Part shown: positions 4,021-40,499 of the stretch, piece by piece
Position numbering within the stretch: the first letter of the stretch is position 1
Layout of the letters: each line of letters opens with the position of its first letter
Source: Oikopleura dioica
Lineage: Eukaryota > Animalia > Chordata
Length of the DNA stretch: 64,000 bases
Direction of reading: 5' to 3'
Assembly (NCBI GenBank): GCA_907165135.1
Contig: OU015567.1
Span: forward strand, 16,094,757-16,158,756
Translations under genes and position numbers: made by a program
The notes under the pieces: generated by a model
The model's input: only the letters and a program-made list of their open reading frames with translations
What the model was told of the DNA's origin: nothing
Database searches by the model: none

Positions 4021-4107
4021 CCTCTAGCTGAGTTCCGCTTTAAGCGGCTTGACAGTGTGACCCCGTGCTCCTCGGGATGGCGCTGTCTGTAAGTGCTCCT
4101 AGGTAGG
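4021..4107 (+). ncRNA. Putative conserved structured RNA element in the LTRs of families B, C and D (function unknown)
   Basis: Covarying stems GACAGTG/CGCTGTC (B), GATACTG/CGGTATC (C), GACACTG/CGGTGTC (D). Covarying hairpins CCGCT-TTA-AGCGG, CCTC-TTT-GAGG, CCGT-TTCG-ACGG. G-U pairs favour the element sense strand. Confidence 0.55.
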
Positions 4108-6514: not shown

Positions 6515-7542
6515 TGATACCGTTTTGCTGCTCAAATGCTCTCTAAGCTAGAATCTTGCAAAGAATGACGCCAAAATTTCAAAACGTGGCTGTATTATTT
6601 TGAGTATGGAGAGAGTGATTTTTCAAATTTTCAAATTTTAATTTCGCGTTTCGCGCAGGTGCTATTCTTTCCAAATAAGGCGCAGCGCATTTCGCGCCGA
6701 TGTTTTTCTTTCCAAATAAGGTGCAGCGCTTTCGCGCATTTGTTTTTCTTCGTTGATTTCGATTTCGGTCCAACAGCCACGTGCGCTCAAATTTTATCGC
6801 AAGAAATAAATCATATCAAAAAGTTCAACTTCCCACTATGTGGCCGTATCCCTTTTTGATAGAATTTAATGAATTTTTATCAATACTTTTCCAAAGCCAG
6901 TTCCAATAATCGTTGTCAGTCCATTGCGTAGTCGTCGTTGTTGTCAGAGAAGTCGCCGCCATTGTTGAAGCTGCAATTCTGTCGGTTTGAGGAGAGTGGT
7001 CAGCTTTCCTAAAGCGAGCCAGAAAGGTGTTCAATCAATATTGCCTACCTAGGAGCACTTACAGACAGCGCCATCCCGAGGAGCACGGGGTCACACTGTC
7101 AAGCCGCTTTAAGCGGAACTCAGCTAGAGGATGAAATTCATGCAACAGCTCCGTCGAAGTAGTAAAAAGCCAATTGATTTTTATCGTCAAGAAGAATTGC
7201 CATCATCGTTTTGAAGACATAGAAGAGTCAGCTTGATTCATCAATAATAATTACCAGTTAATAAATTAAACAAAAGAAGTAGTGAGCACTAGAAAGAGTT
7301 TAAATAAAGAACCGCCGAAACGGGTGGCTAATGTGCCTTTGAATTGTGAAATAACGCGTACGTTATGAGGGAAAGATAGAGATTTATGAATTCATGCAAG
7401 CATCCGAGATTTGGCTCCGAAAATCGTCGGAAATTATATCTGTGAAATTCATGCCTAATCAACCTAATTGGCGAAAATATTTATGTGACTGGGATATTCA
7501 ATTTTTCATTTTTTTCTTGTGTTCTTTTTTCTATTCGTATCA
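6515..7542 (-). repeat. 3' LTR, family B
   Basis: Direct repeat of 13240-14267. Confidence 0.96.
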
Positions 7543-7604
7543 GTATGACCCGTCATGGGTATCTTTTTCTCGGAGCATCTTTTTAGGAAAAAACAAATTG
7601 AATA

Positions 7605-10600
7605 TTAGATTTTTGGTCCGAATATGAGATCATTGTTCTTTTTTGGATGATTCGGATAAAATTTTTCAAAAGCAGAATTAATAAATAAAATCATTTCTGA
7701 CTTATTTTGTAAAACACATTTTGGCAGGTTATACTCAGCAATAAGAACTTTCAATTCAGGTTTTTTTAAATCATAAAGAGTTTTTTCCTTTTTCAAATTT
7801 AAAATTGAAAAGAAAAGTAACTCTCCGCATGCATTTTTTCGCCAATTAGGGTGATTTTTCCAAATATACTCTCTTATTTTAATTCTTAGATCTGATATCG
7901 TTTCCGTTGTCAAATATTGAACATCAAACTTATGCAAAATAAATCTTAGAGCTTCTTTTGTTAATTCACCCAACTTCAAAATACACCCATTTTCAATTGC
8001 CATATCCTCTTTCAATTCCTCAATTCTCGATTCAATTCTCTGGAAAAAACTTTCATGCTCGTTTTCAAATTTGAATGCAATCGAAGTATCAAAATTTTCA
8101 CAAATCATTTCCGAAATATTATTTGACTCTTCGTCAGAGCTTTCTTCCGGGTCTAAATTTGGTATTTTAGAGCAAGGAATGGAATCTTTCGATGATTCTC
8201 TCTCGCGTTTCCGATTTGCCGAAATATCTAATTTATCGTAAGAAATAAGGGGCTCTTGACATTCAGTTGTTATATTTTCATGGACCGTTTCCGTTTCAAT
8301 TGTAGATAATTCCTCGTCTACCGTAACTTCCCAATGAGAATTCTCTTCAATTTCCCACTCCGAATCCGATAAAATAAGGGAACCAGGGACCGGAAAATCG
8401 TCAGGTTTAGGAATCGTTTCAATATTTTGCGTACTATCGGGCTCTATAAAACTCTGCTCATTCTCGATTATTGATACACAAGAACTTTCCTCAGAGGAAG
8501 ATTCCATAGATTCAAGTGTATCAACAATCAAGTCTGAAAAAATATTCTCTAAAACAATATCAATTAATGAGTTAGCTATATTGCCCATTTTTTCCTCTAC
8601 TTCATTTTCCTTCGTAGAGATAGGAGGACAAGAAAAAACACCACTTGAAAAACTTTCTCGCTCAAAAACATTGTCTTTTTGAAAGGTCGAAAAATCGCCT
8701 TGTACATCTGGGAGTTTGACCGAGAGCTCTAGATCTTCTGAATGCTCCTTTCGCGCATTAAATCTTTTCAAATGATCAGCGTGTCGCCTAAATTCTTTAT
8801 CATCAGAAACGACCGTATACCAAGTTCCCTCTTTCGATTTATTTTTTATCTTATAAGGGCCCAGAAAAGCTGGTTTTTTCGCGTCAAAATTTTTGATAAG
8901 AACCATGTCACCGATTTGATAAGGCAAAAATTTTGGGTTCGAAAATCTCTCAAGCCTATTTTAGTTTTCATCTTCAATCAATTTCTTAATTTGTTGAAAA
9001 TCAATATCAGTTTTTTCGAAAGAAGCCCTAAAATTTGGATCGAAAATATCGTGAGCGTTTTTTTACACCCATCTGAAGGGAATAAGGGGGGGTTTTAGTG
9101 ACTGAATGCTCGCTTGAATTAAGATCATGAACAACTTCTTGAAGATACTGATCCCAATTCACTAGCCCACAACGCGCACGTAATCTACTCTTAAGGGTTC
9201 GATTATAATTTTCCACTTGCCCATTTGAAGAAGGATGTCTTGGCGGAGTAAAATGAGGGTCTATATGGTTTTCTTTCATAAATTTCTCAATTTCAGAATG
9301 CTCTCTAGCATTGTCAAGCACAACAATTTTCGGATAAATTGGATTTTTAAAAATAACACTTTTAAATTTTTCAAGTAGATATTTAGAATTACGAGATTTT
9401 AGAGGTTCACAATATCCAAATTTTGAGAAAAAATCAATCATAACCATTACATATTTATTTCCATGATCAGTTGGAGGTAACGTGATCAGATCGAATCCAA
9501 AAACTTCAAAGGGTCCATCTGGTGTTTTAAAGGTCAAAACCGGCGCTTTATTGGGATGAAAATTAGGTTTATCTTTTTGACAATAGGAACAAGTTCTTAT
9601 AAATTCTCTTATTGCTTGGCGCATTCTAGGCCATATATACTTGACGGATATTTTCGAAAAAACTTGATCAATTCCAGAATGGCAGTATTCATGGTAATTT
9701 TTAATAAGCTCATTTTCTAAACTTTTCGGGACTAAAATCCGTCTATTCCCTGAATCATTGAAATAAATAATTTGATCATTCTCCGAAATAACTAAATTTT
9801 CTCTCAAAAGCCAATAAAATGTTATATCGCCTGATGGATTGTTAGGCCATCTATCTATTGTCAAAAATTTTCTTATCTCGGTTAAAAGAGGATCAAGAAT
9901 CTGAAGCTCGCCAAATTGTTTCTGAGTAATTTTAATCGAGTTAATAAGAGGCTGATTTTGAATTGAAGTTTGTCTACTTAAACAATCACTTATCTGCATT
10001 TTCGACGAGGGTTTTTGAATTGTTCTAAAATTAAATCCCTGGATCTCCGTTATCCATCTCGTGATTTTTTGGTTATAGGTTCTAAGTGTTCGAACATACT
10101 TTATGTTTGAATTATCCGTTATCCAATCAAAACTATTGTAAGAAAGATATATTGACCATTTCATCATGCATTGTTTGGCGGAAAATAATTCTTTTTCTAT
10201 AATCGTGTATCGTGATTGGGTTTCATTAAAATTACCGCTGTTATAGCCTACAGGGATCAAACACTCACTAGAATGGTGATGAGAAATATCTCTACAATTT
10301 TTTTCACAAATATAGAGAACCCCACCGTATGCATTATTCGACGCGTCCGTTTCTAAAACGAAAAGCCCATTATCTACTGGGGGTATTTTGAGCTTCATTG
10401 CGTTATCACATATTATATTTTGAAGCTTGCTAAATGCTCTAGAAGCCTCATCTGTCCATTTAAATCCGTTTCTCCAAGTCTTTGTAATTGGTAACGCTAT
10501 TGCCGCAAAATTTTTAATAAATCTACGGTGAAAATTTAAAAGTCCAAAAAGACTTTGCGCACTCTCCTTAGAGCAAGGAATTTTAAGATTTCTTATAGCC

Positions 10601-12183
10601 TGAATTTTATCTGTTGAAGGAGAAATATTACCCTGAGAAATATAATAGCCACAAAATGTCACCGACCTTGTAAAAAATGAAGCTTTTCGAGAGTTTATCC
10701 TAAGATTATTCGCATCAAGAATATGAAAAAACTTTTTGAGGTTCAATAAATGCTCTTGTTCTGTTTTACTATGAATAAGAATATCGTCCATGTACGGTAA
10801 AATTTCGGTTTTATCTACACCTTTAAGTGCCTGATCAATTACTCTCATAAAAAAACTTGGTGCATTTCGACAGCCCATTGGCATGCGTAAAAATCTGAAT
10901 TGACCGAACTCGTTCGAAAATGCCGTTTTGTCTTTTGACTCTTCTGTTAAAGCGATCTGATGAAACCCCTTTATAAGGTCTATCGAAGAAAAAATAGTAC
11001 TTTTATCTAAATACGACAACGAATCCTCTAGATTTGGCAGGGGATAGTGCATCTGAATAGTCACATCATTCAATTTTCTGAAATCAATGACTAGACGAAA
11101 TCGTCCATCTTTTTTTCTAACAAGAATACTCGGACTATTCCAGGGGCTCGAACATCGCTCTATAAATTTATTACCCATAAATTTATCCAAAAGATCTCTT
11201 AAGACATTCCGCAAGCTAAAAGGAGTTCTAAACGGGGCCGAAGAAATCGGAAAGTCTGTATCTGTGTCTATAGAAAATTTTTCAATCGTACATTCTGGAA
11301 GCGAGTCATCCTCGTCCAACATAAGATGTGCAAAATCATCTAAAAGAGCGTCAAAATCAATTTTTATTTTTGAAGAGTGAATATTACCGACGGAAATATT
11401 TTTGAGGTTTTTATGCTTTATGTTTTTTATTCTCGCTATTTCAACGATTTCATGTAATTTAACAAAAACTGTACCCGCGGGAATTCTGATGATTGTATCT
11501 GTTGGATTTATAATAAGGAGACGAAATTTTGGGCAGTTCTTATCGACAACTTGGAAGCTTGGAATAAGCTGCAATTTAGAATTTCCTAAATTAGATTGAT
11601 CAAATGAAAGACTTTTCGATTTTTCAAGATCTTTGATTTTCAAATCAATTATACATTCTGATTTAGGCCTAAAAGAAAGATTATCGGTAGAAAAAGCATC
11701 ATATTCACGATCCTTTCTTTTGTCCTCGTTGTTTTCAAAATTTTCGTTTGTTTTAATTTGATTAAGTTTTGCAAACCGTTCAATTGGTCCGGACTGAATT
11801 ATTTTACGACGGTGAAGGTTTATCATTATCTCATTATCTTGAATAGCCGGTACTCCCAAAATAGGGCTCAAATTGTCAGGAACAACGTAAAATTCTGATT
11901 TTCCCCAATTTACATTTTCAATAATAATATCTGCTTCGACCTTTCCCAAAATATCAATTTGTCCGCCGGAATAATTTACCGCTTCAGTTTTTGTTTTTTG
12001 TATTTTTATGTTTTTTGGTATATTTTTCTTACAAATGCAATTTAATTGTGAACCAGTATCTAATAAAAATCGAACAGGTGAATAAAAAATATTTACAGTT
12101 ACATAAAATTGTTCGCCGATTTTATTAATAGAGATTTTTGGAACGGATATTTGACCAGAATTCGTTCCAAAATTTAGTTTTTT
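7605..12183 (-). CDS. pol: pol (PR, dUTPase-like linker, RT, RH, IN, C-terminal extension), family B; one homopolymer +1 indel near 9060
   Basis: LDTGSQ, YMDD, LETDAS, YHEYCH..CSYC, FDLI/LDNA/GQVE, FLGPY. The frame is open from the slippery site at 12177-12183. The break is a T7 run where six are needed. Confidence 0.92.
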
Positions 12184-13240
12184 GACTGATCTTGGGTGTT
12201 ATTTTCCCGTCGTTTCAAGCAATTTCGCCCGATATGACCAAAACCCTGACACTCGTAGCATTTTATTTTGGGGCACCTCGGCTTAACATGACCCCATTGT
12301 TGGCAATTTCGGCAAAAAGGGACCGCTTGGGGAGGCTGCTGGAATCTGTACGGAAACGGCGGAATAAAATTTGCTGAGGCCGGCGGGTTAGCAGGCCTAG
12401 TAATTTCCTCATTTTTGACCTTCTTTTCGAGCTCTATTTTTGCTACAGTCGCTGTTAATTGTTTTATCTGTTCAAGAAGCTCAGAATTTTTTCGCTCATA
12501 ATTTGACTCCATCTGAGTCAATTTTGAATCCAAAAGTTCGCTCGTTCGATCAACAAAGGACGCAAGATTTGCTGACTCGATCGAGGAAACATTCACACTC
12601 AAAAACCGCTCCCGTGAGTCCAAAAATGTGGCAATTTCCTGAGCACTCTTTTTACTGACACCATGATCACGTAAAAACGACTTGTTCGCTGGCTCAAGGC
12701 TTTTCATAAAGTGAGCATTAATAATAAAGTCTCTTGCATCTTGTTTATCAGAAATAAGCTCTTGACGGTTTTAATTCTTGTCAAAAATGACGAAAACTTC
12801 TCATTCATTTCCGATCTTCGACAAAGATTTTCGAGTTCGACTCCCGCCCGCTCTCGCTTTTCATCCTCAGACTCACTTCCGAAAACAGATTCCAGAAAAT
12901 CAAAAACTTCATCCATATTTTCGAAATTTGCCATTTCCCGCCCATAATTATTCATAAATTCGTGTGAGCAATTATTGCGAATGCAGTCTACGACTTGTCT
13001 GTCAAAAGCTTTTTCTAAATTATTACGGTCAGACTCTCGATTGTGATCCTTAATACTTTTGTCGAAAATTTTTCGCATCGCGGATATTTTGTCGCTCAAA
13101 TTATTCTTAGAAATTGTAAATTCATACGACAGCATATTAGGCCGAAAAAATTGACGAGAATTGAGGGAAGGAAAAGTGGCAAAAAGTAATTCTTCGGGCA
13201 TTTTATTTACCTTGAAGTTGGAGTCTTGCGTGTTCACCAT
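12174..13240 (-). CDS. gag: gag, family B, two CCHC zinc knuckles; 1-nt deletion near 12762
   Basis: ORFs 12704-13240 and 12174-12707. CRNCQQWGHVKPRC-PKIK-CYECQGFGHIGRNC. Colinear with family D Gag once 1 nt is restored. Confidence 0.88.
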
Positions 13241-14267
13241 GATACCGTTTTGCTGCTCAAATGCTCTCTAAGCTAGAATCTTGCAAAGAATGACGCCAAA
13301 ATTTCAAAACGTGGCTGTATTATTTTGAGTATGGAGAGAGTGATTTTTCAAATTTTCAAATTTTAATTTCGCGTTTCGCGCAGGTGCTATTCTTTCCAAA
13401 TAAGGCGCAGCGCATTTCGCGCCGATGTTTTTCTTTCCAAATAAGGTGCAGCGCTTTCGCGCATTTGTTTTTCTTCGTTGATTTCGATTTCGGTCCAACA
13501 GCCACGTGCGCTCAAATTTTATCGCAAGAAATAAATCATATCAAAAAGTTCAACTTCCCACTATGTGGCCGTATCCCTTTTTGATAGAATTTAATGAATT
13601 TTTATCAATACTTTTCCAAAGCCAGTTCCAATAATCGTTGTCAGTCCATTGCGTAGTCGTCGTTGTTGTCAGAGAAGTCGCCGCCATTGTTGAAGCTGCA
13701 ATTCTGTCGGTTTGAGGAGAGTGGTCAGCTTTCCTAAAGCGAGCCAGAAAGGTGTTCAATCAATATTGCCTACCTAGGAGCACTTACAGACAGCGCCATC
13801 CCGAGGAGCACGGGGTCACACTGTCAAGCCGCTTAAAGCGGAACTCAGCTAGAGGATGAAATTCATGCAACAGCTCCGTCGAAGTAGTAAAAAGCCAATT
13901 GATTTTTATCGTCAAGAAGAATTGCCATCATCGTTTTGAAGACATAGAAGAGTCAGCTTGATTCATCAATAATAATTACCAGTTAATAAATTAAACAAAA
14001 GAAGTAGTGAGCACTAGAAAGAGTTTAAATAAAGAACCGCCGAAACGGGTGGCTAATGTGCCTTTGAATTGTGAAATAACGCGTACGTTATGAGGGAAAG
14101 ATAGAGATTTATGAATTCATGCAAGCATCCGAGATTTGGCTCCGAAAATCGTCGGAAATTATATCTGTGAAATTCATGCCTAATCAACCTAATTGGCGAA
14201 AATATTTATGTGACTGGGATATTCAATTTTTCATTTTTTTCTTGTGTTCTTTCCTCTATTCGTATCA
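13240..14267 (-). repeat. 5' LTR, family B
   Basis: Direct repeat of 6515-7542, followed on the element strand by TGGTGAACAC. Confidence 0.96.
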
Positions 14268-15606: not shown

Positions 15607-16613
15607 TGATACCGTTGGATTGAAACTCTTTTAAATAAATAACTCTAGCTCTGACTCTGCAAAATCTGCAAGAAATTTAACACAAAATTCGGCGGTGTTA
15701 CGGTTATATTGAGTATGAAGAGAATGAGGCAGAAATGAAAATTTTTCAAATTTCGCAGCGCGCGCAGCTGCAGCGAATTTCCAAGCGTGTTTTTCTTTCC
15801 AAATAAGGAGACGCGCGAATTGTTTTTCTCGTTGTTTTCAAATTTTCGTTTCACCATTTTTACGTAACCGCCACCGCCAAGAGAGTTCATTTTAGAAAAT
15901 CAAATTTCTCACTATGTGACCCAGATCATTTCTAAAATAAACCCTCTTTATTTTCGTTTTCGTCTATCAAAAAGCAAGTCCAGTAAGCAAGTCCATAGTC
16001 GTTTCCGTTGCGTTTGTCGTCGTCGTTGTAGTAGTAGTCGTAATCGTAAAAGCCGTCGCCGCTGCCAAAGTCGTCAGCACAGTGCATTCCGTCGTTATTG
16101 TAGAAGATGGCCAGTCGTTCTAAATCGAGCCAGAAAGGAGTTTTGACAACTTTGCCTACCTAGGAGCAGTTACTGATACCGCCATCCCGCGGTGCACGGG
16201 GTCACAGTATCAAGCCTCAAAGAGGAACTCGGCTAGGGGTTGAATCCATCAAGCAGCAGCAAATCGTAAAAACCTGTTGAGCTATTGAAATCAAGGAGAA
16301 AAATATCAGAAATAGTAAATAAGGAGATGAGTTGTGATTTTCATGCAACCTAAAAGTGTGAGAGAAAAACGCCCAAGGGGCGGTGGCTAATGTGCCTTCA
16401 GGGAATGAAATTACGCGTACGTAACAGAGAACTACAGTCATGTCTGACTCAGATTGACCTTCTACAATTTTTTCTTTTGAATTTGCGATAAGGCTCAATA
16501 TCGCTTTTAAATGTATGTGATTTTCATGCACATAATCAACCAAATTGGCGCAAATGGACCGTGAGTTTTTCGATTCAATTTTTATTTTTTGTGTTCTTTC
16601 CTTATCGTTATCA
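15607..16613 (-). repeat. 3' LTR, family C
   Basis: Direct repeat of 22439-23445. Confidence 0.96.
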
Positions 16614-16668
16614 GTATGACCCTACCAGGGTATCTTTTATCTTTTTGAGCTTCTTTTGAGGAATAGAA

Positions 16669-19600
16669 CTATTGAATCTGAGCTGAAGGCCCAAAAATAA
16701 GAATGTTTTGCTTTCGCGGATGATTTGGGTAAGTTCTGAGGAAATATTCATTTATCAATTCAGTAAGAACAGTTTTATTTTTTGCTTTAAAATCGGTTAT
16801 ACCAAACTGTGCACAAAGGACCTTTAGCTCGGGTTTTGACAATTCAAAAAGAGTTTTCTCCTCTTTCAAATCAAGTATCGAAAAGAAAAGCAACTCTCCT
16901 GATTTGCTTTTACGCCAATTTGGGTGATTTTTTGAAAATGATTCTCTTATTTTAATCCTAATATCGCTAGCGCTATCTGTATGTTCCGCTATTTCAATGT
17001 CAAATTTGAAGCAGATGAATTTGAGAGTATCTTTACTTAATTCGCCTAATTTTAATACACAACATTTTTCAATCATCATGTCAGCCTCTATAATTTTATA
17101 TTGATCATCAAGTTTCTCGAAAAAATGCCGATTGTCATCCTCAAATTTAAAATCCAACATATTTCCGCCAAAATCAAGCCTACGTTTCACCCTGTCCAAA
17201 TTTTCTGGGTTATAATTAGCATGAATTCTCGGTGTAATCAGATTAGGGTCTAATAAATTATCTATTTCCGCTGAATCTAAATTTGGCATTTTATTCTGGG
17301 GAAGAGAATCTTTTGAGGCCTCCCGCTCGCGTTTTCTATTCTGAGAAATGTCAAGTTTATCATAAGAAGTCAAATTTTGGGGCTGATTTAAATTTGACCC
17401 GAGAATTGTTTCCGGCTCGGAGTCTGAATCGTCGAGCGTTACCTCGAAGCTCGGATTTGTCACATACTCAAATTCCGACCCTGAAACACTCTCATCATCT
17501 GATTTTTCGTTGAATAGAACCTGTCTCTCCGTATCCTCACAAGAATTTTCAGCCGCGATGACACTCTGAAAAGAAAGCGACTCTTCCTCCTCAGAATCAG
17601 AAGAAGTTTCGCTTACATTTTCATGTAACAATTGCACAAAAAATGTCTCGAATATTGAATCGACTACTCTGTTAGTCAATTTTTCTTCTAAAATTTCAAG
17701 CTTTTTCTCAATTTCAGTTTCCCTAACCTCAGAATAAGCGTTCATTATGGGCTCAATTTGGCAAAAATTACGTTCCTCATAAAAAATAGGGCTTCGTATT
17801 TCCGGCAAAATATCACAAATTTCATCTTGCGTATCGATAAGAATTTTTTCATCATTATCAATCGGTCTCATATTGAATTTTCTTATGTGGTCCGCATGTC
17901 TCCGATAACTTTTGTCCCCTGATTTTACAGTATACCACGTTCCTGCGTTCGATTTTGATAAAATTGTGAAAGGGCCAATAAACGAAGGTTTTTTACTCTC
18001 AAAATTTTTGATTAGTACTGATTCTCCTAATTTATATTCAATAAATTTTGGATTCGAAAATTTATCGAGTCGTTTAGCTTTTTCGCCGTCCAAATCGGAT
18101 CTGATTTTTTCAAAATCAATTTTTATCTGTAGATCATAATCCCTCCAATTTGAGTCAACAAGATTATGTGGATTTTTAGCTCCGGTTTGCACTGTGAAAG
18201 GGGCTAATTTAGTGACGCTGTGAACGGCAGTATTTAAATCGTGAACTATTTCAAAAAGATAATTATCCCAATTTTGATAATTACACTTTGCCCTCAATCT
18301 ACTTTTAAGGCTTCTGTTAAAATTTTCCACCTGACCATTAGACTGTGGATGTCTTGGCGGGGTAAAGTGGGGCTCAATGTTATTTTCCGTCATGAATTTC
18401 GCGATCTCAGAGTGCTCTCGTGCATTATCAAGGACAACCATTCGTGGGAAATAAGGATTACGAAAAATAACGCTTTTAAATTTGTCAAGCAATCCTAGAG
18501 AATTACGATTTTGAAGTGGTTCGCAGTACGCAAACTTTGAGAAAAAATCTATGATGACCATCACATGCTTATTTCCTGAGTCGGTTGGTGGGAGGGTTAT
18601 CAAATCGAAGCCTAGAACCTGATAGGGGCTTTCGGGTGTTTTAAAGGTCAAAATCGGCGCTCTATTAGGGTGAAAATTTGGCTTATCCTTCTGACAAAAT
18701 TCACATGACTTTATAAAATCGCGAATGGCTTTATTCATTCTCGGCCAAATATACTTTGTTGCAATTTTTAAAAATGTCTGGTCTGTCCCAGCATGTGCAT
18801 AAGAGTGATATTCCTCGATGATATCATTTTCAAGATTTTTGGGGACGCAAAAACGTTTATTTCCTTCCTTATCAACTAGAATAAGTTCACCGGTTTCTAA
18901 TATTTTAAGGTCCTCTCTTAGCATTTTATAGAAAAAAATGTCTCCCTTTGGAGCATTGGGCCATCTGTCAATTCCAACGAATTTTCGAACGTCTCCAAGA
19001 ATTTGATCTAATTTTTGTAATTCACAGAATTTTGAAGGAGAAAATTTGATTTGATTAATTGAAAAATTTTCGACTTTGCATGAATTGTTTCGACTAAGAA
19101 AATCACTTATTTTCATCTTACTTGAAGGACGCTGAATAATTCTAAAGGAAAATCCTTGAATATCTGTCACCCACCTGGCTATTTTCTGGTTGTTGGTTCT
19201 TAGTGTTCTTATGAACTTAATATTGCCGTTATCAGTGATTAAGTCGAATTCACGAAATGATAGATAAATTGCCCATTTTTCCATGCATAATTTGGCGCTA
19301 AGCAACTCTTTTTCAATTATCGTATATCTCGCTTGTGCATCGGAAAAATTTCCGCTATTATAACAAACAGGTGCCAGACAGTCTGAATCGTGCATGTGAT
19401 TTTCCCCGCAAAACCCTCGCTCGCAAATGTACAAAACCCCTCCGTATCCCTTATCGGATGCATCTGTTTCAAGGACATATTTTACTTCATCTGTTGGGGG
19501 GATTTTTAACTCTATAGCATTATTACAAATTTTTTCTTTCAAAATTTCAAGGGCTTCTGAGGCTTCAGCCGACCATAAAAATCCTGATCTATAAGTTTTT

Positions 19601-21276
19601 GTTATGGGCAGAGCAATCGACGCAAAATTTTTAATAAATCGTCTGTGATAGTTAAGAGCCCCAAAAAGACTTTGTGCCTGTTCTCTCGATTTCGGTATAC
19701 AAAGATTTTTAATTGCTTGAATCCTATCCAAAGACGGGGAAATTTTACCGTTAAAAATATCATATCCACAAAAACTTACTTTTTCCATAAAAAAATCTGC
19801 TTTTTTGCAATTTATTCGTAAATTGTTGGCCGCCAAAACAAGAAAAAGCTTATTTAGATTTTCAACATGTTCCTCTTCTGTTTTAGAATGGACTAAAAGA
19901 TCATCCATATAAGCTATTACCTCAGTCTTTTTAATACCCGCTAAACATTTGTCCATTATTCTCATGAAAAAATTAGGGCTGTTTTTGCAACCCATGGGCA
20001 TTCGTAAAAATTGAAATTGGCCAAATTCACAACTAAACGCTGTCTTTTGTTTCGAGTCCTCGTCAATGGCCAATTGATGAAACCCCTTAAGCATATCTAA
20101 GCTACTAAAAATACGGCTTTTGCTAAGATAAGAAATACTATCCTCAAGATTGGGAAGAGGATGATGGGTTTGAAGAGTGACATCGTTTATACGCCTAAAA
20201 TCAACTACAAGTCTAAATTTTCCGTTTTTCTTTCTTACAAGCAGACAAGGGCTATTCCAGGGGCTAGAACAGGGCTCTATTATTTTATTCTTAATTTTAT
20301 TATCTAGAATCGACCGAAATTCCTCCCTTATTCCGAAGGGAGTTCTGTACGGATGCGAGGAAATAGGTGCCGATGACCCAGTATCAATTGAAAATTTTTC
20401 AAGTGAGCATTCTGGCAAGGGATCGTCATCATCAAGAAAAAGAAAAGAAAACGAATCATCTACAAGCGAATAAAATTTCTTTTTTACTTTTGGAGATCTT
20501 ATTTTTCCTACATTAATATTCTGCACTTTTGAAGCTTTAATTTTATTAATTCGAGCGACTTCAGCCACCTCGAAAAGTTTAACGAAAGTTGTTCCGGGGT
20601 GAATTTTTATTGACGATTCCGTTGGGTTTACTACTAACGCTCTAAATATTGGGGCTTCTGGGGTAATTGTTTGAAAACTCGGTATCAATTGTAATTTTGA
20701 CTCGCCAAGATTAGAATTTTCGAAAAACAAATTACGCGACTTATCAATCCCAGGGACATGAAGGTCTATAAGCATTTCCGATCGGGGCCTAAATGTTATC
20801 GTTTCGGTCGAAATCGCGTCGAAAAAATCTGTTTTTTCCTCAGCTCCCACTTGATTTATGGAACAAAACCGATCAATCGGGCCTGCTTTAATCAATTTTC
20901 TTCTGTAAAGATTAATCAAAATTTCGTTTTCTTCTAAAGCAGGGGCCCCTAAAATGGGGCTGAGCTCATCTGAGACAACATAAAATACGGATTTACCCCA
21001 TGAGACGCCGTCAATAAAAATATCTGCTTCTATTTTGCCGTAGATATGAATTTTACCACCTGAATAATTAAGAACTTCAATATTTGTTTTTATGATTTTT
21101 TTGTTTTTTGGTACATTTTTTTTACACAAAATATTTAATTGAGAACCAGTATCAATTAAAAAGTGAACATTTTTATCAAAAACTTTTGCATTTATGTGAA
21201 ATTGTTTTCCTATGGTATTTACAAAAAATTTCGGAACGGCAATTTGGCCAAAATTCGTCCCGCTTAGGAGTTTTTT
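16669..21276 (-). CDS. pol: pol polyprotein, family C (expressed by -1 frameshift; about 1535 codons)
   Basis: ORF 16669-21129 stays open upstream through FLIDTGSQLNIL to the slippery site at 21270-21276. YMDD, LETDAS, YHSYAH..CEFC, DDE, FIGPF. Confidence 0.95.
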   Translation of the reverse strand, partial: KKLLSGTNFGQIAVPKFFVNTIGKQFHINAKVFDKNVHFLIDTGSQLNILCKKNVPKNKKIIKTNIEVLNYSGGKIHIYGKIEADIFIDGVSWGKSVFYVVSDELSPILGAPALEENEILINLYRRKLIKAGPIDRFCSINQVGAEEKTDFFDAISTETITFRPRSEMLIDLHVPGIDKSRNLFFENSNLGESKLQLIPSFQTITPEAPIFRALVVNPTESSIKIHPGTTFVKLFEVAEVARINKIKASKVQNINVGKIRSPKVKKKFYSLVDDSFSFLFLDDDDPLPECSLEKFSIDTGSSAPISSHPYRTPFGIREEFRSILDNKIKNKIIEPCSSPWNSPCLLVRKKNGKFRLVVDFRRINDVTLQTHHPLPNLEDSISYLSKSRIFSSLDMLKGFHQLAIDEDSKQKTAFSCEFGQFQFLRMPMGCKNSPNFFMRIMDKCLAGIKKTEVIAYMDDLLVHSKTEEEHVENLNKLFLVLAANNLRINCKKADFFMEKVSFCGYDIFNGKISPSLDRIQAIKNLCIPKSREQAQSLFGALNYHRRFIKNFASIALPITKTYRSGFLWSAEASEALEILKEKICNNAIELKIPPTDEVKYVLETDASDKGYGGVLYICERGFCGENHMHDSDCLAPVCYNSGNFSDAQARYTIIEKELLSAKLCMEKWAIYLSFREFDLITDNGNIKFIRTLRTNNQKIARWVTDIQGFSFRIIQRPSSKMKISDFLSRNNSCKVENFSINQIKFSPSKFCELQKLDQILGDVRKFVGIDRWPNAPKGDIFFYKMLREDLKILETGELILVDKEGNKRFCVPKNLENDIIEEYHSYAHAGTDQTFLKIATKYIWPRMNKAIRDFIKSCEFCQKDKPNFHPNRAPILTFKTPESPYQVLGFDLITLPPTDSGNKHVMVIIDFFSKFAYCEPLQNRNSLGLLDKFKSVIFRNPYFPRMVVLDNAREHSEIAKFMTENNIEPHFTPPRHPQSNGQVENFNRSLKSRLRAKCNYQNWDNYLFEIVHDLNTAVHSVTKLAPFTVQTGAKNPHNLVDSNWRDYDLQIKIDFEKIRSDLDGEKAKRLDKFSNPKFIEYKLGESVLIKNFESKKPSFIGPFTILSKSNAGTWYTVKSGDKSYRRHADHIRKFNMRPIDNDEKILIDTQDEICDILPEIRSPIFYEERNFCQIEPIMNAYSEVRETEIEKKLEILEEKLTNRVVDSIFETFFVQLLHENVSETSSDSEEEESLSFQSVIAAENSCEDTERQVLFNEKSDDESVSGSEFEYVTNPSFEVTLDDSDSEPETILGSNLNQPQNLTSYDKLDISQNRKREREASKDSLPQNKMPNLDSAEIDNLLDPNLITPRIHANYNPENLDRVKRRLDFGGNMLDFKFEDDNRHFFEKLDDQYKIIEADMMIEKCCVLKLGELSKDTLKFICFKFDIEIAEHTDSASDIRIKIRESFSKNHPNWRKSKSGELLFFSILDLKEEKTLFELSKPELKVLCAQFGITDFKAKNKTVLTELINEYFLRTYPNHPRKQNILIFGPSAQIQ
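21232..21276 (-). promoter_or_regulatory. -1 programmed ribosomal frameshift signal (A_AAA_AAC, ~7-nt spacer, stem-loop); also at 12136-12183, 34442-34486 and 46265-46312
   Basis: The heptamer is in gag frame in all four families, pol is in the -1 frame, and the downstream stem covaries. Confidence 0.8.
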
Positions 21277-22439
21277 GTACTGTCAGTTGTCGGAGCTTGT
21301 TGGTTATTTGTATCTTTATTGTTACGAACACGGCAATTTCTTCCAATATGGCCAAAACGGCGGCATTCATAACACTGAATTTTCGGACAATTTGGTTTGA
21401 TGTGACCGTGCATTCCGCAATTGCGGCAAATTCTAGGAGGAAAAAATTGACTGGGGAATGGTTGACCCGAAAATCCTTGATTTTGTTGCCCGGGCGCTTG
21501 AAATGCTGAATTGAAAAACCCATGACCAAACGAACTAGGAGGGGCGCTTTGCAAGCCCTGGCGACGAATAATCTCGGTTTCATTTTTTTCAAAAGAAGCA
21601 CTCTCTTTTTTCTCAGCTTCAAGCCTTGCAATTGTTGCAGTCAACTTTTCGATAGACTGAGCGAGCTCGGAATTCTTGCGCTCGTAATTTGCTTCCATCT
21701 GCTCAAACCGGGAATCAAGAAGCTCACTTGTTTTGTCAGTAAAGAAAGCCGCAAAATCCCGATGAGAACTTATGGCAGAAACATGGGCACTCAAATAGCG
21801 CTCCCGCTCATCCAAAAAAGCTACTTTCTCTGCCATTGATTTTTTACCATGACCATGGTCACGTAGAAAACTTTGATTGCAGGGCTCGATATTTTTGGCC
21901 ATGTGCTGATCGACAATAAAACTTTGGGCGTCGGGCTTGTCGTTTATGATCTCTGCGATAGATCGAACCCTTTTCATAAAGGAAGAATACTTCTCATTGT
22001 TTTCAGATCTCCTTGTCAAATTTTCAAGTTCGCCCAAGGCCCGTTCGCGCCTCTCCTCGTCCGTTTCTAACCCGAAAAGCGATTCCAAAAAAGAAAACGC
22101 TTCTTCTTCCTTATCAAAACCGGACATTTCTCTCCCATAGTTATTCAAAAATTCAGTAGAGCAATTATTTCGAATACAATCAACTGCCTGTCGCTCAAAT
22201 TGCGCAACAAGCTCAGTTTCCTCAGATTCCCGTTTATGATCTTTTATACTTTTACGAAAAATTTTTTTCATATTCGAAATTTTATCGCACAGACTTTTTT
22301 TGGACACGGTAAATTCGTAAGCCTGCATGTTTGGCCGAAACAGCTGGCGTTGATTCAAAAATGGAAAGGGTTGAAAAAGGATTTCCTCTGGCATTCGAGT
22401 TACCTTTGTGTGATGATCCGGTTCCGGAGTGGGCACCAT
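21264..22439 (-). CDS. gag: gag, family C (391 aa, two CCHC knuckles)
   Basis: Intact ORF. CRNCGMHGHIKPNC..CYECRRFGHIGRNC. Confidence 0.95.
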   Translation of the reverse strand: MVPTPEPDHHTKVTRMPEEILFQPFPFLNQRQLFRPNMQAYEFTVSKKSLCDKISNMKKIFRKSIKDHKRESEETELVAQFERQAVDCIRNNCSTEFLNNYGREMSGFDKEEEAFSFLESLFGLETDEERRERALGELENLTRRSENNEKYSSFMKRVRSIAEIINDKPDAQSFIVDQHMAKNIEPCNQSFLRDHGHGKKSMAEKVAFLDERERYLSAHVSAISSHRDFAAFFTDKTSELLDSRFEQMEANYERKNSELAQSIEKLTATIARLEAEKKESASFEKNETEIIRRQGLQSAPPSSFGHGFFNSAFQAPGQQNQGFSGQPFPSQFFPPRICRNCGMHGHIKPNCPKIQCYECRRFGHIGRNCRVRNNKDTNNQQAPTTDSTKNS

Positions 22440-23445
22440 GATACCGTTGGATTGAAACTCTTTTAAATAAATAACTCTAGCTCTGACTCTGCAAAATCTG
22501 CAAGAAATTTAACACAAAATTCGGCGGTGTTACGGTTATATTGAGTATGAAGAGAATGAGGCAGAAATGAAAATTTTTCAAATTTCGCAGCGCGCGCAGC
22601 TGCAGCGAATTTCCAAGCGTGTTTTTCTTTCCAAATAAGGAGACGCGCGAATTGTTTTTCTCGTTGTTTTCAAATTTTCGTTTCACCATTTTTACGTAAC
22701 CGCCACCGCCAAGAGAGTTCATTTTAGAAAATCAAATTTCTCACTATGTGACCCAGATCATTTCTAAAATAAACCCTCTTTATTTTCGTTTTCGTCTATC
22801 AAAAAGCAAGTCCAGTAAGCAAGTCCATAGTCGTTTCCGTTGCGTTTGTCGTCGTCGTTGTAGTAGTAGTCGTAATCGTAAAAGCCGTCGCCGCTGCCAA
22901 AGTCGTCAGCACAGTGCATTCCGTCGTTATTGTAGAAGATGGCCAGTCGTTCTAAATCGAGCCAGAAAGGAGTTTTGACAACTTTGCCTACCTAGGAGCA
23001 GTTACTGATACCGCCATCCCGCGGTGCACGGGGTCACAGTATCAAGCCTCAAAGAGGAACTCGGCTAGGGGTTGAATCCATCAAGCAGCAGCAAATCGTA
23101 AAAACCTGTTGAGCTATTGAAATCAAGGAGGAAAATATCAGAAATAGTAAATAAGGAGATGAGTTGTGATTTTCATGCAACCTAAAAGTGTGAGAGAAAA
23201 ACGCCCAAGGGGCGGTGGCTAATGTGCCTTCAGGGAATGAAATTACGCGTACGTAACAGAGAACTACAGTCATGTCTGACTCAGATTGACCTTCTACAAT
23301 TTTTTCTTTTGAATTTGCGATAAGGCTCAATATCGCTTTTAAATGTATGTGATTTTCATGCACATAATCAACCAAATTGGCGCAAATGGACCGTGAGTTT
23401 TTCGATTCAATTTTTATTTTTTGTGTTCTTTCCTTATCGTTATCA
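22439..23445 (-). repeat. 5' LTR, family C
   Basis: Direct repeat of 15607-16613, followed by TGGTGCCCAC. Confidence 0.96.
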
Positions 23446-30063: not shown

Positions 30064-31099
30064 GATGCAAATTAATTCCTATCGCTTGCTCTCTAAGCTA
30101 CTCTTTCTGCAAAAGAATGAGGCCAAAATACGAAAACGGCTTTTATTATTTTGGGTATGATGAGAGTGAATCCAAATTTTCAAATTTTTCAAAACGCATT
30201 ACGCGCAGGTGCAATTCTTTCCAAATAAGGCGCTCGCGCATTTCGCGCGTTGTTTTTCTTTCCAAATAAGGTGAAGCGATTTTCGCGCTTTTCGTCATCC
30301 ATTTTTATCAAGCAGCCGTTTTCGTAATTATTAAATGAAAAATAATCCGTATCAAAGAGATCAACTTCCCACTATGTGGCCATATCACTCTTTGATAAAA
30401 TTATTCTCATATTTTTCCAAAGCCGTTGTCCAAAGTCGTTGTCAGTCCTTGCGTTGTTGTCGTCGTCGTAGAAGTTGTTGTCGAAATCGTTGAAGCTTCA
30501 GTTTTGTCGGTATTTGAGGAAAGTGGTCAGTTGTCCTAAATCGAGCCAAAAAAGGGTTCAAAACAATTTCGCCTACCAGGAGCACTTACAGACACCGCCA
30601 TCCCGCGGAGCACGGGGTCACAGTGTCAAGCCGTCGAAACGGAACTCAGCTGAAGGATGAAATGCATACAGCAGCTTCCATTGAAATCATAGAAGAGAAT
30701 CGTAGTAGAAATAATGAAGAACTCGTTATTTGTGATTGAACGAGAAATCTGAGCAGCAATTTTGAAATCATCGAAGAAACAGCTTGAATCGTCAATAATT
30801 TGTACCAGTAAAAATAACTGTATAAACTAGAATGTGAGCATTAGAATTTTTAACAAAACCGCCTAAACGGGTGGCTAACGTGCCTTCAGTTTGTGAAATA
30901 ACGCGTACGTTATGAATGAAAAAATAGAGAATAATGAGCTCATGCAAGCATCCAAAGATTTGGCTCCATAAATCTTCGTTTCGAGTTAACCGTGATTTTC
31001 ATGCAATAATCAACCTAATTGGCAAAAACCGGGCCGTGACTGGAATATTCAATATTATTTTTTTTTTGATCTTTTGTGTTCTTTTCCTTATTCGTATCA
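30063..31099 (-). repeat. 5' LTR, family D (1037 bp)
   Basis: TGATACG...TGCATCA on the element strand. Upstream flank GGCAT. Confidence 0.95.
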
Positions 31100-39040: not shown

Positions 39041-39092
39041 GTTCTTTTTCAAAAAGATGCTCCTACAAAAAGATACCCTGGATGGGTCATAC

Positions 39093-40130
39093 TGATACGA
39101 ATAAGGAAAAGAACACAAAAGATCAAAAAAAAAATAATATTGAATATTCCAGTCACGGCCCGGTTTTTGCCAATTAGGTTGATTATTGCATGAAAATCAC
39201 GGTTAACTCGAAACGAAGATTTATGGAGCCAAATCTTTGGATGCTTGCATGAGCTCATTATTCTCTATTTTTTCATTCATAACGTACGCGTTATTTCACA
39301 AACTGAAGGCACGTTAGCCACCCGTTTAGGCGGTTTTGTTAAAAATTCTAATGCTCACATTCTAGTTTATACAGTTATTTTTACTGGTACAAATTATTGA
39401 CGATTCAAGCTGTTTCTTCGATGATTTCAAAATTGCTGCTCAGATTTCTCGTTCAATCACAAATAACGAGTTCTTCATTATTTCTACTACGATTCTCCTC
39501 TATGATTTCAATGGAAGCTGCTGTATGCATTTCATCCTTCAGCTGAGTTCCGTTTCGACGGCTTGACACTGTGACCCCGTGCTCCGCGGGATGGCGGTGT
39601 CTGTAAGTGCTCCTGGTAGGCGAAATTGTTTTGAACCCTTTTTTGGCTCGATTTAGGACAACTGACCACTTTCCTCAAATACCGACAAAACTGAAGCTTC
39701 AACGATTTCGACAACAACTTCTACGACGACGACAACAACGCAAGGACTGACAACGACTTTGGACAACGGCTTTGGAAAAAATATGAGAATAATTTTATCA
39801 AAGAGTGATATGGCCACATAGTGGGAAGTTGATCTCTTTGATACGGATTATTTTTCATTTAATAATTACGAAAACGGCTGCTTGATAAAAATGGATGACG
39901 AAAAGCGCGAAAATCGCTTCACCTTATTTGGAAAGAAAAACAACGCGCGAAATGCGCGAGCGCCTTATTTGGAAAGAATTGCACCTGCGCGTAATGCGTT
40001 TTGAAAAATTTGAAAATTTGGATTCACTCTCATCATACCCAAAATAATAAAAGCCGTTTTCGTATTTTGGCCTCATTCTTTTGCAGAAAGAGTAGCTTAG
40101 AGAGCAAGCGATAGGAATTAATTTGCATCA
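39093..40130 (+). repeat. 3' LTR, family D
   Basis: Homologous to 30063-31099, 49969-51005 and 58519-59194. Confidence 0.95.
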
Positions 40131-40499
40131 GGCATTTTCAGATGATTTTCAGGTCATTAAAATCATAAAAAAAATCAAGAAAAATTCTGATGCGTTTTTT
40201 GGCGTTTTCAGATGATTTTAATTGCAATCAACAAAGAAAATAGAGATTTTGTATCACGCATCAGAATTTTTCTTGATTTTTTTTTTGATTTTTATGCATT
40301 AAAAATCATCTGAAAACGCTTAAAAACGCATCAGAATTTTTCTTGATAATTTTATGATTTTTATGAACTGAAAATCATCTAAAAACGCCAAAAAACGCAT
40401 CAGAATTTTTCTTGATTTTTTTTGATTTTTATGACCTGAAAATCATCTGAAAACGCCAAAAAACGCATCAGAATTTTTCTTGATTTTTTTTGATTTTTA
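40131..40499. repeat. Satellite with an orientation switch: forward 40131-~40223, non-satellite remnant ~40224-40256, reverse 40257-40499
   Basis: Monomer orientation flips across GCAATCAACAAAGAAAATAGAGATTTTGTATCA. Confidence 0.85.

What the first reader, a model, noticed from the sequence alone, without database searches (positions are those of the whole stretch)
4021..4107. Conserved, covarying ~87-nt multi-stem RNA structure inside the LTRs; no match to ribozymes I can recognise
Seen (B 4021-4107; C 16155-16239 reverse; D 39535-39620). The closing stem is CUAG/CUAG (B, C) or UCAG/CUGG (D), extended by GAGU/GCUC. The hairpin is CCGCU-UUA-AGCGG, CCUC-UUU-GAGG or CCGU-UUCG-ACGG, followed by a CUU linker. 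A 7-bp stem GACAGUG/CGCUGUC, GAUACUG/CGGUAUC or GACACUG/CGGUGUC encloses an invariant UGAC...AUGG internal loop and a CCCG/CGGG hairpin, followed by a GUAA(G/C)U junction. This is the best-conserved part of otherwise divergent LTRs. Conserved G-U pairs work only on the genomic-RNA strand. By eye it does not fit the hammerhead (no CUGANGA/GAAA), HDV or twister cores. Family A has a different GC-rich stem cluster at about 2790-2935. Inference: a functional RNA module (self-cleavage, 3'-end formation, export, packaging or strand transfer).
Basis: partly seen in the sequence, partly recalled or inferred. Interest (0 to 1): 0.8.

Follow-up and report, generated by a model that had tools for sequence, protein, structure and literature searches.

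The report
Conserved RNA hairpins inside retrotransposon LTRs
The long terminal repeats of a young Ty3/gypsy-type retrotransposon family at a chromosome end carry a pair of RNA hairpins kept by compensating mutations and followed by a splice-donor-like strand; this is most likely an ordinary cis-acting signal of the element's own RNA, of a kind not yet catalogued, and nothing shows it to be a ribozyme.

Summary
The motif is present nine times, not three, always in the sense of the element's genes, but in only three distinct versions (B, C, D). It is the best-conserved stretch of LTRs of about 1.0-1.16 kb. Two adjacent hairpins are kept by four compensating double changes with no broken pair; random placement of the observed changes does this in fewer than 1 in 4,000 trials. 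G-U pairs and folding energies favour the sense strand. The closing stem that would make a three-way junction is possible in all versions, but it has no independent covariation and disappears in longer-context folds of B and D. Rfam (4,227 families, E up to 10) and ARAGORN find nothing, so no known ribozyme, 5S, tRNA or snRNA matches. The block is not coding. The elements are env-less Ty3/gypsy retrotransposons inserted, with 5-bp duplications, into a 69-nt subtelomeric satellite next to a (TTAGGG)n telomere. My best reading (about 0.3) is a cis-acting RNA domain in the transcribed LTR that presents a 5' splice-site-like strand upstream of a poly(A)-signal-like block. Packaging is nearly as likely.

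The parts
4021..4107 (+). Motif copy B, in the LTR of a truncated + strand element (LTR about 3609-4638). AUG at 4077-4079; GUAAGU at 4089-4094.
   Evidence: 112.3 bits
7044..7130 (-). Motif copy B2, in the 3' LTR of element B. One base differs, in the loop of hairpin II.
   Evidence: 111.8 bits
13769..13855 (-). Motif copy B3, in the 5' LTR of element B.
16155..16239 (-). Motif copy C, in the 3' LTR of element C. The junction strand reads GUAACU.
   Evidence: 104.2 bits
22987..23071 (-). Motif copy C2, in the 5' LTR of element C. Identical to copy C.
30572..30656 (-). Motif copy D2, in the 5' LTR of a D-type element (LTR about 29937-31099).
39536..39620 (+). Motif copy D, in the 3' LTR (39093-40256) of a + strand D-type element.
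   Evidence: 106.3 bits
50478..50562 (-). Motif copy D3, in the 3' LTR (about 49843-51005) of the inverted duplicate of the D-type element.
58962..59046 (+). Motif copy D4, in a solo LTR piece (58519-59194) that is cut off after 676 nt and capped directly by telomere repeat.
15607..23445 (-). Element C, complete. LTRs at 15607-16613 and 22439-23445 (1007 of 1008 bases identical). The PBS begins at 22438. The gag ORF (21264-22439) and pol ORF (16669-21129) are both uninterrupted. The 5-bp target duplication is TGAAA, inside the 69-nt satellite.
6515..14267 (-). Element B. LTRs at 6515-7542 and 13240-14267 (1025 of 1028 bases identical). The PBS follows directly after 13240. The 5-bp target duplication is ATCAG, inside the satellite. 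gag and pol are each interrupted (see full report; counts only).
39093..40256 (+). LTR of family D, with ends TGATAC...GTATCA. The motif lies at LTR positions 443-528. The LTR carries about 1.2 units of the 69-nt satellite near its 3' end.
13552..13570 (-). 19-nt block downstream of the motif. Most of its columns are the same letter in all four LTR families. The same block is at 15903-15921 (-), 39812-39830 (+) and 47825-47843 (-). ATTAAA (B, 13590-13595) or AATAAA (C, 15947-15952) lies about 25-30 nt upstream of it. It is a candidate poly(A) site with a GU-rich downstream element, or alternatively a transcription start.
47409..48701 (-). LTR of family A (5' copy). It has no motif by the covariance model. 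A GC-rich cluster at 48005-48135 sits at the matching LTR position and holds CAGUAACU after a 7-bp stem.
59195..64000 (+). (TTAGGG)n telomere, about 800 units, running to the end of the window.

Best explanation
The motif is a cis-acting structure of the retrotransposon's own sense-strand RNA. It consists of two adjacent hairpins: a short hairpin II, and a 15-17-bp stem III that carries two invariant 1x1 mismatches. In the isolated segment a third stem can close them into a three-way junction. This much is shown or nearly shown (about 0.85).

The rest is inferred. I place the motif in the transcribed R part of the LTR, so it would sit in the 5' leader and again in the 3' untranslated end. I read it as an RNA-processing control module. 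Stem III ends exactly where a 5' splice-site hexamer begins (GUAAGU in B and D, GUAACU in C), and it holds an invariant AUG 12 nt upstream of that hexamer. Binding of U1 snRNP to this strand would do one or both of two things. It could silence the poly(A)-signal-like block about 180-220 nt downstream when that block is read in the 5' LTR, as the major splice donor does in foamy viruses. [quoted passage not shown] The hairpins would set how accessible that strand is. The confidence given below is for this specific mechanism.
For: Structure under selection on the sense strand.

Position: the motif lies at about 410-530 of LTRs 1007-1164 nt long and is their most invariant stretch. R and U5 are generally better conserved than U3, and residual conservation in long R regions goes with stem-loops (PMC3601003).

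Upstream: blocks shared by the families lie about 90-330 nt into the LTR and include a CCAAT-containing stretch. A/T-rich boxes follow in B and D. This looks like a promoter upstream of the motif.

Downstream: ATTAAA (B) and AATAAA (C) sit at aligned columns 921-926. About 30 nt later comes a CA and a GU-rich block shared by all four families. That is the AATAAA plus GT-rich module described for animal Metaviridae and retroviral LTRs (PMC3601003).

Splice-site likeness: an exact 5' splice-site hexamer follows stem III directly in B and D. Family A, otherwise unalignable, has CAGUAACU after a 7-bp stem at the same LTR position, an 8-mer identical to that of C.

Acceptor-like site: a pyrimidine tract plus CAG near the LTR 3' end is the best-scoring YAG in C and D and near the best in B.

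Against: There are no transcript data, so the start site, poly(A) site and splice junctions are all unplaced. The block shared by all families could equally be the transcription start, with an A/T box at about -30 in all four families. In that case the motif is in U3 and is present only at the 3' end of the RNA.

C and A carry C at intron position +5, and the exon side (UCU, UCA) is weak.

Pol has no envelope-like part: its roughly 500-aa C-terminal extension has no transmembrane segment. So no subgenomic mRNA is obviously needed.

A second donor-like site, AAG|GUAAAU in B and AAG|GUAACU in C, lies between the PBS and the gag start, the classical place for a retroviral donor.

Predicted accessibility of the hexamer is the same in 5'-end and 3'-end contexts, 0.35-0.49, so there is no sign of a foamy-virus-like switch.

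D and A lack a canonical hexamer at the aligned poly(A)-signal place. The acceptor-like site is not among the best in A. A GTAAGT in 87 nt has roughly a 2 % chance on its own.
Confidence: 0.3

Rival explanations
1. Recognition or packaging (and perhaps dimer-linkage) signal. The hairpins and the unpaired G/U-rich strand next to them would be the site that the element's Gag, through its CCHC zinc knuckle, picks out to select genomic RNA for the particle.
For: Gag carries a CCHC knuckle. Retroelement genomic RNAs carry cis-acting structures for dimerisation, packaging and priming near their 5' ends (PMC4974528). The sequence-invariant parts of the motif are the internal mismatched region of stem III and the single-stranded strand after it, while the stems covary and the loops drift. 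That pattern fits a protein-binding site.
Against: No palindromic loop is available for a kissing dimer; the loops differ between versions. Family A, which has the same kind of gag, lacks the motif. Nothing in the sequence is specific to this role. If the motif is in R it is also present on any spliced or 3'-terminal fragment, which makes for poor selectivity.
Confidence: 0.25
2. A U3 element that acts only in the 3' untranslated end of the genomic RNA. Possible roles are export or stability, or a second contact for the primer tRNA like the 3' half of the bipartite primer-binding site of Ty3.
For: The block shared by all four families, about 190-220 nt downstream, has an A/T-rich box about 20-40 nt before it in every family and an initiator-like CA. 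If that is the start site, U3 is about 700 nt, R about 225 nt and U5 about 100 nt, which are ordinary proportions. Ty3 places two segments of its primer-binding site in the 3' UTR (PMC4974528). The core 8-mer GUGACCCC of the motif equals part of family A's primer-binding site.
Against: The three motif-bearing families have three different primer-binding sites, yet the motif core is invariant. The 8-mer identity is with a family that lacks the motif, and it could be chance (roughly 1 %). U3 is usually the least conserved LTR part (PMC3601003).
Confidence: 0.15
3. Translational control. The invariant AUG in a strong context inside stem III opens a short upstream reading frame (9 codons in B and C, 21 in D), and the hairpin tunes its use.
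For: The AUG and its context (G at -3, G at +4) are invariant. Four of the five base differences in the first nine codons are synonymous or conservative (Leu/Val, Ser/Thr) (read).
Against: The frame is too short for any statistic. D loses the stop through a 1-nt deletion. Several further AUGs lie between the motif and gag. Two of the changes are already explained as compensating partners in stem III.
Confidence: 0.08
4. A self-cleaving ribozyme of a class not yet described.
For: It is a compact multi-helix fold with invariant unpaired strands. Ribozymes are known in the terminal repeats of other retroelements (hammerheads in plant retrozymes and Penelope-like elements; from my own knowledge).
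Against: No Rfam ribozyme model scores, even at E up to 10 on slices of 201-601 nt, in three versions. The junction strands (1, 3 and 7 nt) do not fit the hammerhead core. The order of helices leaves only 3 nt where an HDV-like fold needs a 7-nt strand. The three-way closure itself is doubtful. Cleavage inside R or U3 would destroy the genomic RNA.
Confidence: 0.04
5. A captured host small-RNA gene or polymerase III module in the LTR, as in Cassandra, Ajax (5S rRNA) and Helenus (tRNA).
For: LTRs with small-RNA-derived, structured inserts are a described kind (PMC10886601).
Against: ARAGORN finds no tRNA in the window. Rfam finds no 5S, tRNA, snRNA or SL RNA likeness. Those elements are short non-autonomous TRIMs, whereas these are autonomous elements of 7.7-7.8 kb.
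Confidence: 0.03
6. No RNA function. The block would be a DNA-level regulatory region, or a stretch recently exchanged between LTR families, and the pairings incidental.
For: Single-sequence z-scores are weak. There are only three lineages. The structure was derived from the same sequences it is tested on.
Against: Four to five double compensating changes with no broken pair occur in fewer than 1 in 4,000 random placements. Recent exchange would give identity, not paired double substitutions. The G-U asymmetry favours one strand.
Confidence: 0.05

Closest known systems
Major splice donor region in the R part of foamy-virus LTRs (PMC3694450)
   Same: A 5' splice-site sequence inside the LTR, upstream of the poly(A) signal, embedded in RNA structure. 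The order donor-like strand, then AAUAAA-like hexamer, then GU-rich block is the same in B and C.
   Different: No sequence likeness was tested or claimed. U1 binding, the start site and the poly(A) site are all unknown here. My accessibility calculation shows no difference between 5' and 3' contexts. The elements here have no env and belong to Ty3/gypsy.
Leader and packaging RNA structures of retroviruses and of Ty1/Ty3 (PMC4974528)
   Same: Family-specific, covarying stem-loops in the terminal parts of the genomic RNA of an element that has a zinc-knuckle Gag.
   Different: No Rfam retroviral leader or packaging family matches. The motif lies in the middle of the LTR rather than between the primer-binding site and gag; that leader is only about 45-50 nt long here.
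Small-RNA-derived modules in LTRs: Cassandra, Ajax, Helenus (PMC10886601)
   Same: A conserved, structured, RNA-gene-like block inside LTRs.
   Different: No 5S or tRNA likeness. These are autonomous elements, not TRIMs.
Hammerhead ribozymes in terminal repeats of retrozymes and Penelope-like elements (own knowledge)
   Same: A proposed three-helix junction in a terminal repeat of a retroelement.
   Different: The hammerhead covariance models do not score, the core strands are absent, and the junction closure is not supported in context.

Membership tests
Ty3/gypsy (Metaviridae-type) LTR retrotransposon (context of the motif) | Direct LTRs with TG...CA ends, a primer-binding site after the 5' LTR, a purine-rich tract before the 3' LTR, and a 5-bp target duplication | tested here: met
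   ends TGATAC...GTATCA; TGG-initial site directly after the LTR; duplications TGAAA and ATCAG; LTR pairs 99.7-99.9 % identical
Ty3/gypsy (Metaviridae-type) LTR retrotransposon (context of the motif) | gag with a zinc knuckle; pol in the order RT, RNase H, integrase | tested here: met
   (PF00098; PF00078, PF17917/PF17919, PF17921, PF00665 in that order)
Hammerhead ribozyme | Match to the hammerhead covariance models (conserved core strands at a three-helix junction) | tested here: not met
   no hit at E up to 10. The junction strands are 1, 3 and 7 nt long and have other sequences.
Hammerhead or any self-cleaving ribozyme | Site-specific self-cleavage | not testable with these tools
   No biochemical or RNA-end data are available.
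HDV-like ribozyme | Nested double pseudoknot, with the 3' strand of P1 lying between P3 and P4 | tested here: not met
   Only 3 nt (CUU) lie between hairpin II and stem III. There is no Rfam hit.
Twister, twister-sister, pistol, hatchet, hairpin, VS ribozymes | Match to the family's covariance model | tested here: not met
Small-RNA-derived LTR modules (Cassandra/Ajax 5S, Helenus tRNA) | Recognisable 5S rRNA or tRNA sequence and structure in the LTR | tested here: not met
   no tRNA; no 5S, tRNA or snRNA
Small-RNA-derived LTR modules (Cassandra/Ajax 5S, Helenus tRNA) | Short non-autonomous element (TRIM) | tested here: not met
   The elements are 7.7-7.8 kb with gag and pol.
Foamy-virus-type donor/poly(A) control | 5' splice site in R, upstream of the poly(A) signal | tested here: inconclusive
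   The order of the sequence motifs fits in B and C. D and A lack a canonical hexamer at that place. The borders of R are unknown.
Foamy-virus-type donor/poly(A) control | [quoted passage not shown] | tested here: inconclusive
   Predicted unpaired probability of the donor region is 0.35-0.49 in both contexts. This is thermodynamic prediction only.
Foamy-virus-type donor/poly(A) control | U1 snRNP binding to the donor | not testable with these tools
   No host U1 sequence or binding data are available.
Self-priming chromovirus-type leader (Tf1-like) | Primer-binding site complementary to the 5' end of the element's own transcript | tested here: not met
   no complement of 9 nt or more of the post-LTR sequence in the element's own LTR

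The most novel reading that the evidence does not exclude
The two hairpins, the invariant mismatched region and the 7-nt strand form the core of a self-cleaving or otherwise catalytic RNA of an undescribed class, carried in the LTRs of autonomous Ty3/gypsy elements. A less extreme version is that an env-less LTR retrotransposon uses a U1-dependent, structure-gated poly(A) switch of the foamy-virus type.
Probability: 0.05. Interest if true: 0.85.

Novelty: new member of a known kind. Interest (0 to 1): 0.35.

Why it matters
Conserved RNA structures are the main handle on how LTR retroelements control the fate of their single transcript: translation, splicing, polyadenylation at the correct LTR, and packaging. 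Outside yeast Ty elements and vertebrate retroviruses almost none are defined. This family offers a compact, clearly covarying example in elements that look recently active (LTR pairs 99.7-99.9 % identical, one copy with open gag and pol). The example has an unusual juxtaposition of a start codon, a splice-donor hexamer and a poly(A)-like block inside the LTR. If transcript maps confirmed a donor in R upstream of the poly(A) site, it would show that the foamy-virus answer to the 'two identical LTRs' problem also exists in retrotransposons. If not, it remains one more family-specific cis element, useful as an Rfam-type model for annotating these LTRs.

Tried and rejected
Tried, with no result or a negative result:
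- Rfam at gathering threshold on the whole window, and at E up to 10 on slices around B, D and C. Only unrelated noise hits outside the motif.
- ARAGORN. No tRNA or tmRNA.
- Protein coding. No frame is open through the conserved block in all three versions.
- Divergent copies. The covariance model, run with filters off, finds only the nine copies and nothing in family A. The three family A copies differ by 2 bases and give no covariation.
- Self-priming. No complement of the primer-binding site in the LTR.
- Cyclisation or long-range pairing. No complement of 10 nt or more to the block is shared between families.
- The downstream alternative helix proposed by RNAalifold. Four of its pairs are broken in one version each, so I rejected it as the conserved fold.
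- A foamy-virus-like structural switch. No context effect on the predicted accessibility of the hexamer.
- An env gene that would call for a subgenomic mRNA. The Pol extension has no hydrophobic segment, no Pfam hit and no PDB sequence hit.
- Host identification. The closest gag and pol relatives (44-71 % identity) are unnamed metagenome proteins. The nearest named ones are arthropod proteins at 25-35 %, plus one plant and one fungus. Literature searches did not place the window.

Full report
**What is in the window.** The window is the end of a chromosome. From 59195 to 64000 it is (TTAGGG)n, about 800 units. The 59 kb before that contain no ordinary gene. They are a mosaic of LTR retrotransposons and arrays of a 69-nt satellite.

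The long ORFs encode a Gag with a CCHC knuckle and a Pol with reverse transcriptase, RNase H and integrase in the Ty3/gypsy order. Four LTR families are present: A, B, C and D.

- The LTRs are 1007-1293 nt long. Those of B, C and D begin TGATA; family A begins TGATATCC. All four end GTATCA.
- The 5' LTR is followed directly by a TGG-initial primer-binding site. The site differs between the three families in which a 5' LTR junction was read, A, B and C.
- Element C (15607-23445, minus strand) and element B (6515-14267, minus strand) are flanked by 5-bp target duplications, TGAAA and ATCAG. The satellite unit continues across each insertion. Their LTR pairs are 1007/1008 and 1025/1028 identical. 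These are recent, integrase-made insertions into the subtelomeric satellite.

C has gag and pol uninterrupted. For the other copies:

| Copy | gag | pol |
|---|---|---|
| Element B | 1 frame switch | 1 frame switch, 1 stop |
| D-type element starting about 31100 | 1 frame switch | 3 frame switches; lacks its 3' part |
| D-type copy 33564-40256 | lacks the first ~74 codons | 1 frame switch |
| D-type copy 49843-56536 (inverted duplicate of the previous) | lacks the first ~74 codons | 3 frame switches, 1 stop |
| Element A | no switch | 1 frame switch |

Some of these may be assembly errors.

- The motif occurs nine times, once in each LTR of families B, C and D.
- It is always in the same sense as the element's genes. 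This includes a solo LTR piece that is cut off after 676 nt and capped by the telomere.
- Only three versions are distinct.
- In an alignment of the four LTR families, the motif columns are the most invariant stretch among B, C and D: 24-33 of 40 columns, against 0-15 in most of the LTR.

**Is the structure real?**

- With the structure written onto alignment A2, all 23 pairs hold in all rows and three pairs have changed on both sides. Sliding the partners by 1-3 columns drops pairing to 32-52 % and removes all double changes.
- MAFFT misaligns hairpin II. Read directly, its third pair is G-C in B and D and U-A in C. Its fourth pair is C-G in B and C and U-A in D.
- In a simulation I re-placed the 13 variable columns outside hairpin II at random. 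No pair was broken in 42 of 200,000 trials. Three or more compensated pairs arose in 11 of 200,000.
- The antisense strand folds 6-10 kcal/mol less well, and three G-U pairs are invariant.
- No reading frame is open across the block in all versions.

I conclude that selection keeps a fold of the sense-strand nucleic acid, almost certainly the RNA.

Three qualifications apply.

- There are three lineages only, and the structure was derived from them.
- Single-sequence z-scores are unimpressive, at -1.5 to -2.2.
- The closing stem is weak evidence. Its inner half is invariant. Its one compensated pair (in D) fits the competing pairings that RNAalifold prefers in a 190-nt context equally well. 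Pair probabilities with 60-300 nt of flank give stem III 1.00 and hairpin II 0.40-0.99, but stem I about 0 in B and D and 0.56-0.69 in C.

The secure object is therefore two adjacent hairpins plus conserved flanking strands, not necessarily a closed three-way junction.

**What it is not.**

- Rfam finds nothing at gathering threshold in the window. It also finds nothing on the motif at E up to 10 in short slices of all three versions. This covers the hammerhead, HDV, twister, pistol, hatchet, hairpin and VS models, 5S, tRNA, snRNAs and the retroviral leader families.
- ARAGORN finds no tRNA.
- The junction strands and the order of helices do not fit hammerhead or HDV-like topology.
- The primer-binding sites have no complement in the LTR, so self-priming is out.
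- No long-range complement is shared by the families.

**What is invariant beyond the fold.**

- The lower part of stem III, stem Ia and the top of hairpin II covary.
- The loops drift.
- Four parts are fixed in sequence:
  - the upper part of stem III, with its two 1x1 mismatches (G opposite G, C opposite A);
  - the CUU linker;
  - the strand after stem III;
  - about 70 nt downstream.
- The fixed region contains an AUG with G at -3 and +4 (4077-4079 in B).
- Twelve nucleotides later, exactly where stem III ends, comes GUAAGU (4089-4094 in B; the same in D; GUAACU in C).
- Family A does not match the model, and its cluster is no more stable than shuffles on the sense strand. At the same LTR position it has a 7-bp stem followed by CAGUAACU, the same 8 letters as in C.

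**Placing it in the LTR.** Nothing here maps transcripts, so this part is inference.

- Upstream of the motif, at about 90-330 nt into the LTR, lie blocks shared by B, C and D, including a CCAAT-containing stretch. They are followed in B and D by an A/T-rich box and an initiator-like CTCAC.
- Downstream, at aligned columns 921-926, B has ATTAAA and C has AATAAA.
- About 30 nt later comes a 19-nt block whose columns are mostly the same letter in all four families (13552-13570 in B). It starts with a CA and runs into GU-rich sequence.

This is the AATAAA plus GT-rich module that marks the R/U5 border in animal Metaviridae and retroviral LTRs. R and U5 are usually better conserved than U3 (PMC3601003). 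On that reading the motif lies in R, about 170 nt after the start and about 220 nt before the poly(A) site.

The same block can be read instead as a start site with an A/T box at -20 to -40 in all four families. That reading would give more ordinary proportions (U3 about 700, R about 225, U5 about 100 nt) and would put the motif in U3. I weigh these two readings at about 60:40.

**Mechanism.** A splice-donor hexamer in R upstream of the poly(A) signal is the arrangement of foamy viruses. [quoted passage not shown] That is the closest known way of working, and it is my best single guess (0.3).

Points that fit:
- the order of the motifs;
- the hexamer sitting at the foot of a conserved stem;
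- its presence in family A;
- a pyrimidine-tract/CAG acceptor-like site near the LTR 3' end, which is the best YAG in C and D.

Points against:
- the weak +5 position in C and A;
- no predicted context effect on accessibility;
- no env-like gene to need a subgenomic RNA;
- a second donor-like site between the primer-binding site and gag;
- the unresolved start site.

A Gag-recognition or packaging role is nearly as likely (0.25). It would explain why the fixed parts are a distorted helix and a G/U-rich single strand. The remaining readings are listed with their weights in the rival explanations.

**Comparison and novelty.** This is a member of a known kind: family-specific cis-acting RNA structures in the terminal parts of retroelement genomes. 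It is not in Rfam, and it is not a member of any ribozyme or small-RNA family tested. I rate it 'new member of a known kind', with interest 0.35.

Close relatives of gag and pol (44-71 % identity) exist only as unnamed metagenome and Logan proteins on contigs of 1-8 kb. The nearest named proteins are from arthropods at 25-35 %. The host of the window is unknown, and the element is a retrovirus-like element that may belong to an animal. I therefore made no collection scan, pattern search or contig look-up, and the step is referred.

- In notebook entry 2 I wrote one 16-letter LTR block in degenerate (IUPAC) form, which amounts to a small consensus. I did not use it for anything.
- One search printed three-frame translations of two short stretches at the pol end, with stops shown. 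I drew only the general conclusion that the apparent third ORF is the continuation of pol, and I list no positions.

Noticed in passing
59195-64000, junction at 59194/59195: About 4.8 kb of (TTAGGG)n ends the window. The repeat is joined directly to an LTR that is cut off after 676 nt (58519-59194, identical to the first 676 nt of the D LTR). This looks like a broken end healed by telomere addition inside an LTR.
   Followed up: partly
5372-6514, 14268-15606, 23386-25826, 31102-33594, 40256-40502, 48702-49968, 56506-58516: Arrays of a 69-nt satellite, in both orientations, fill the space between elements. Elements B and C sit inside them with 5-bp target duplications, and the unit continues across each insertion. 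The D LTR (about 40114-40230), and more weakly the A LTR, contain about 1.2 units of the same repeat near their 3' ends. So either the satellite derives from an LTR part or the LTR captured it. Repeated insertion into this satellite suggests a target preference.
   Followed up: partly
33564-40240 and 49859-56536: A 6.7-kb inverted duplication, 97-100 % identical, of a D-type element that lacks its 5' LTR and the start of gag. A family A element lies between the arms. The 100 %-identical part ends at LTR position about 688, only 11 nt from where the telomere-capped LTR is cut. This hints at a shared breakage history (fold-back or break-induced copying).
   Followed up: no
13552-13570 (-), 15903-15921 (-), 39812-39830 (+), 47825-47843 (-): A 19-nt block with the same letter in most columns in all four LTR families, including A, which otherwise hardly aligns. 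It holds a small inverted repeat (4 + 3 + 4) whose outer pair is C-G in B and D and U-A (T-A) in C and A. It could be a start site, a poly(A) site, or a palindromic factor-binding site.
   Followed up: partly
16669-18279 (-) and the matching ends of the other pol genes (for example 37430-39040 +, 41845-43401 -): Pol continues about 500 aa beyond the integrase core. The AlphaFold model shows an SH3-like barrel (the integrase C-terminal domain; Foldseek hits Ty3 and retroviral integrases), a long helix, a disordered stretch of about 140 aa, and a confident alpha/beta domain of about 165 aa (pLDDT about 88). That last domain has no Pfam hit, no PDB sequence hit and no top Foldseek match. It has no transmembrane segment, so it is not an envelope protein. 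It is conserved in the metagenome relatives.
   Followed up: partly
13200-13239 (-), 22398-22438 (-), 47369-47408 (-): The three families in which it could be read have three different primer-binding sites that share only the first five letters. Each is followed within about 25-35 nt by a donor-like site: AAG|GUAAAU in B, AAG|GUAACU in C and GAG|GUACUG in A. In B and C that site lies just before a gag start codon.
   Followed up: no
All close relatives of these gag and pol proteins are unnamed sequences from environmental assemblies, on contigs about the length of one element. The window's own proteins are not in the collection. The host lineage therefore seems to be unrepresented among annotated genomes.
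   Followed up: partly
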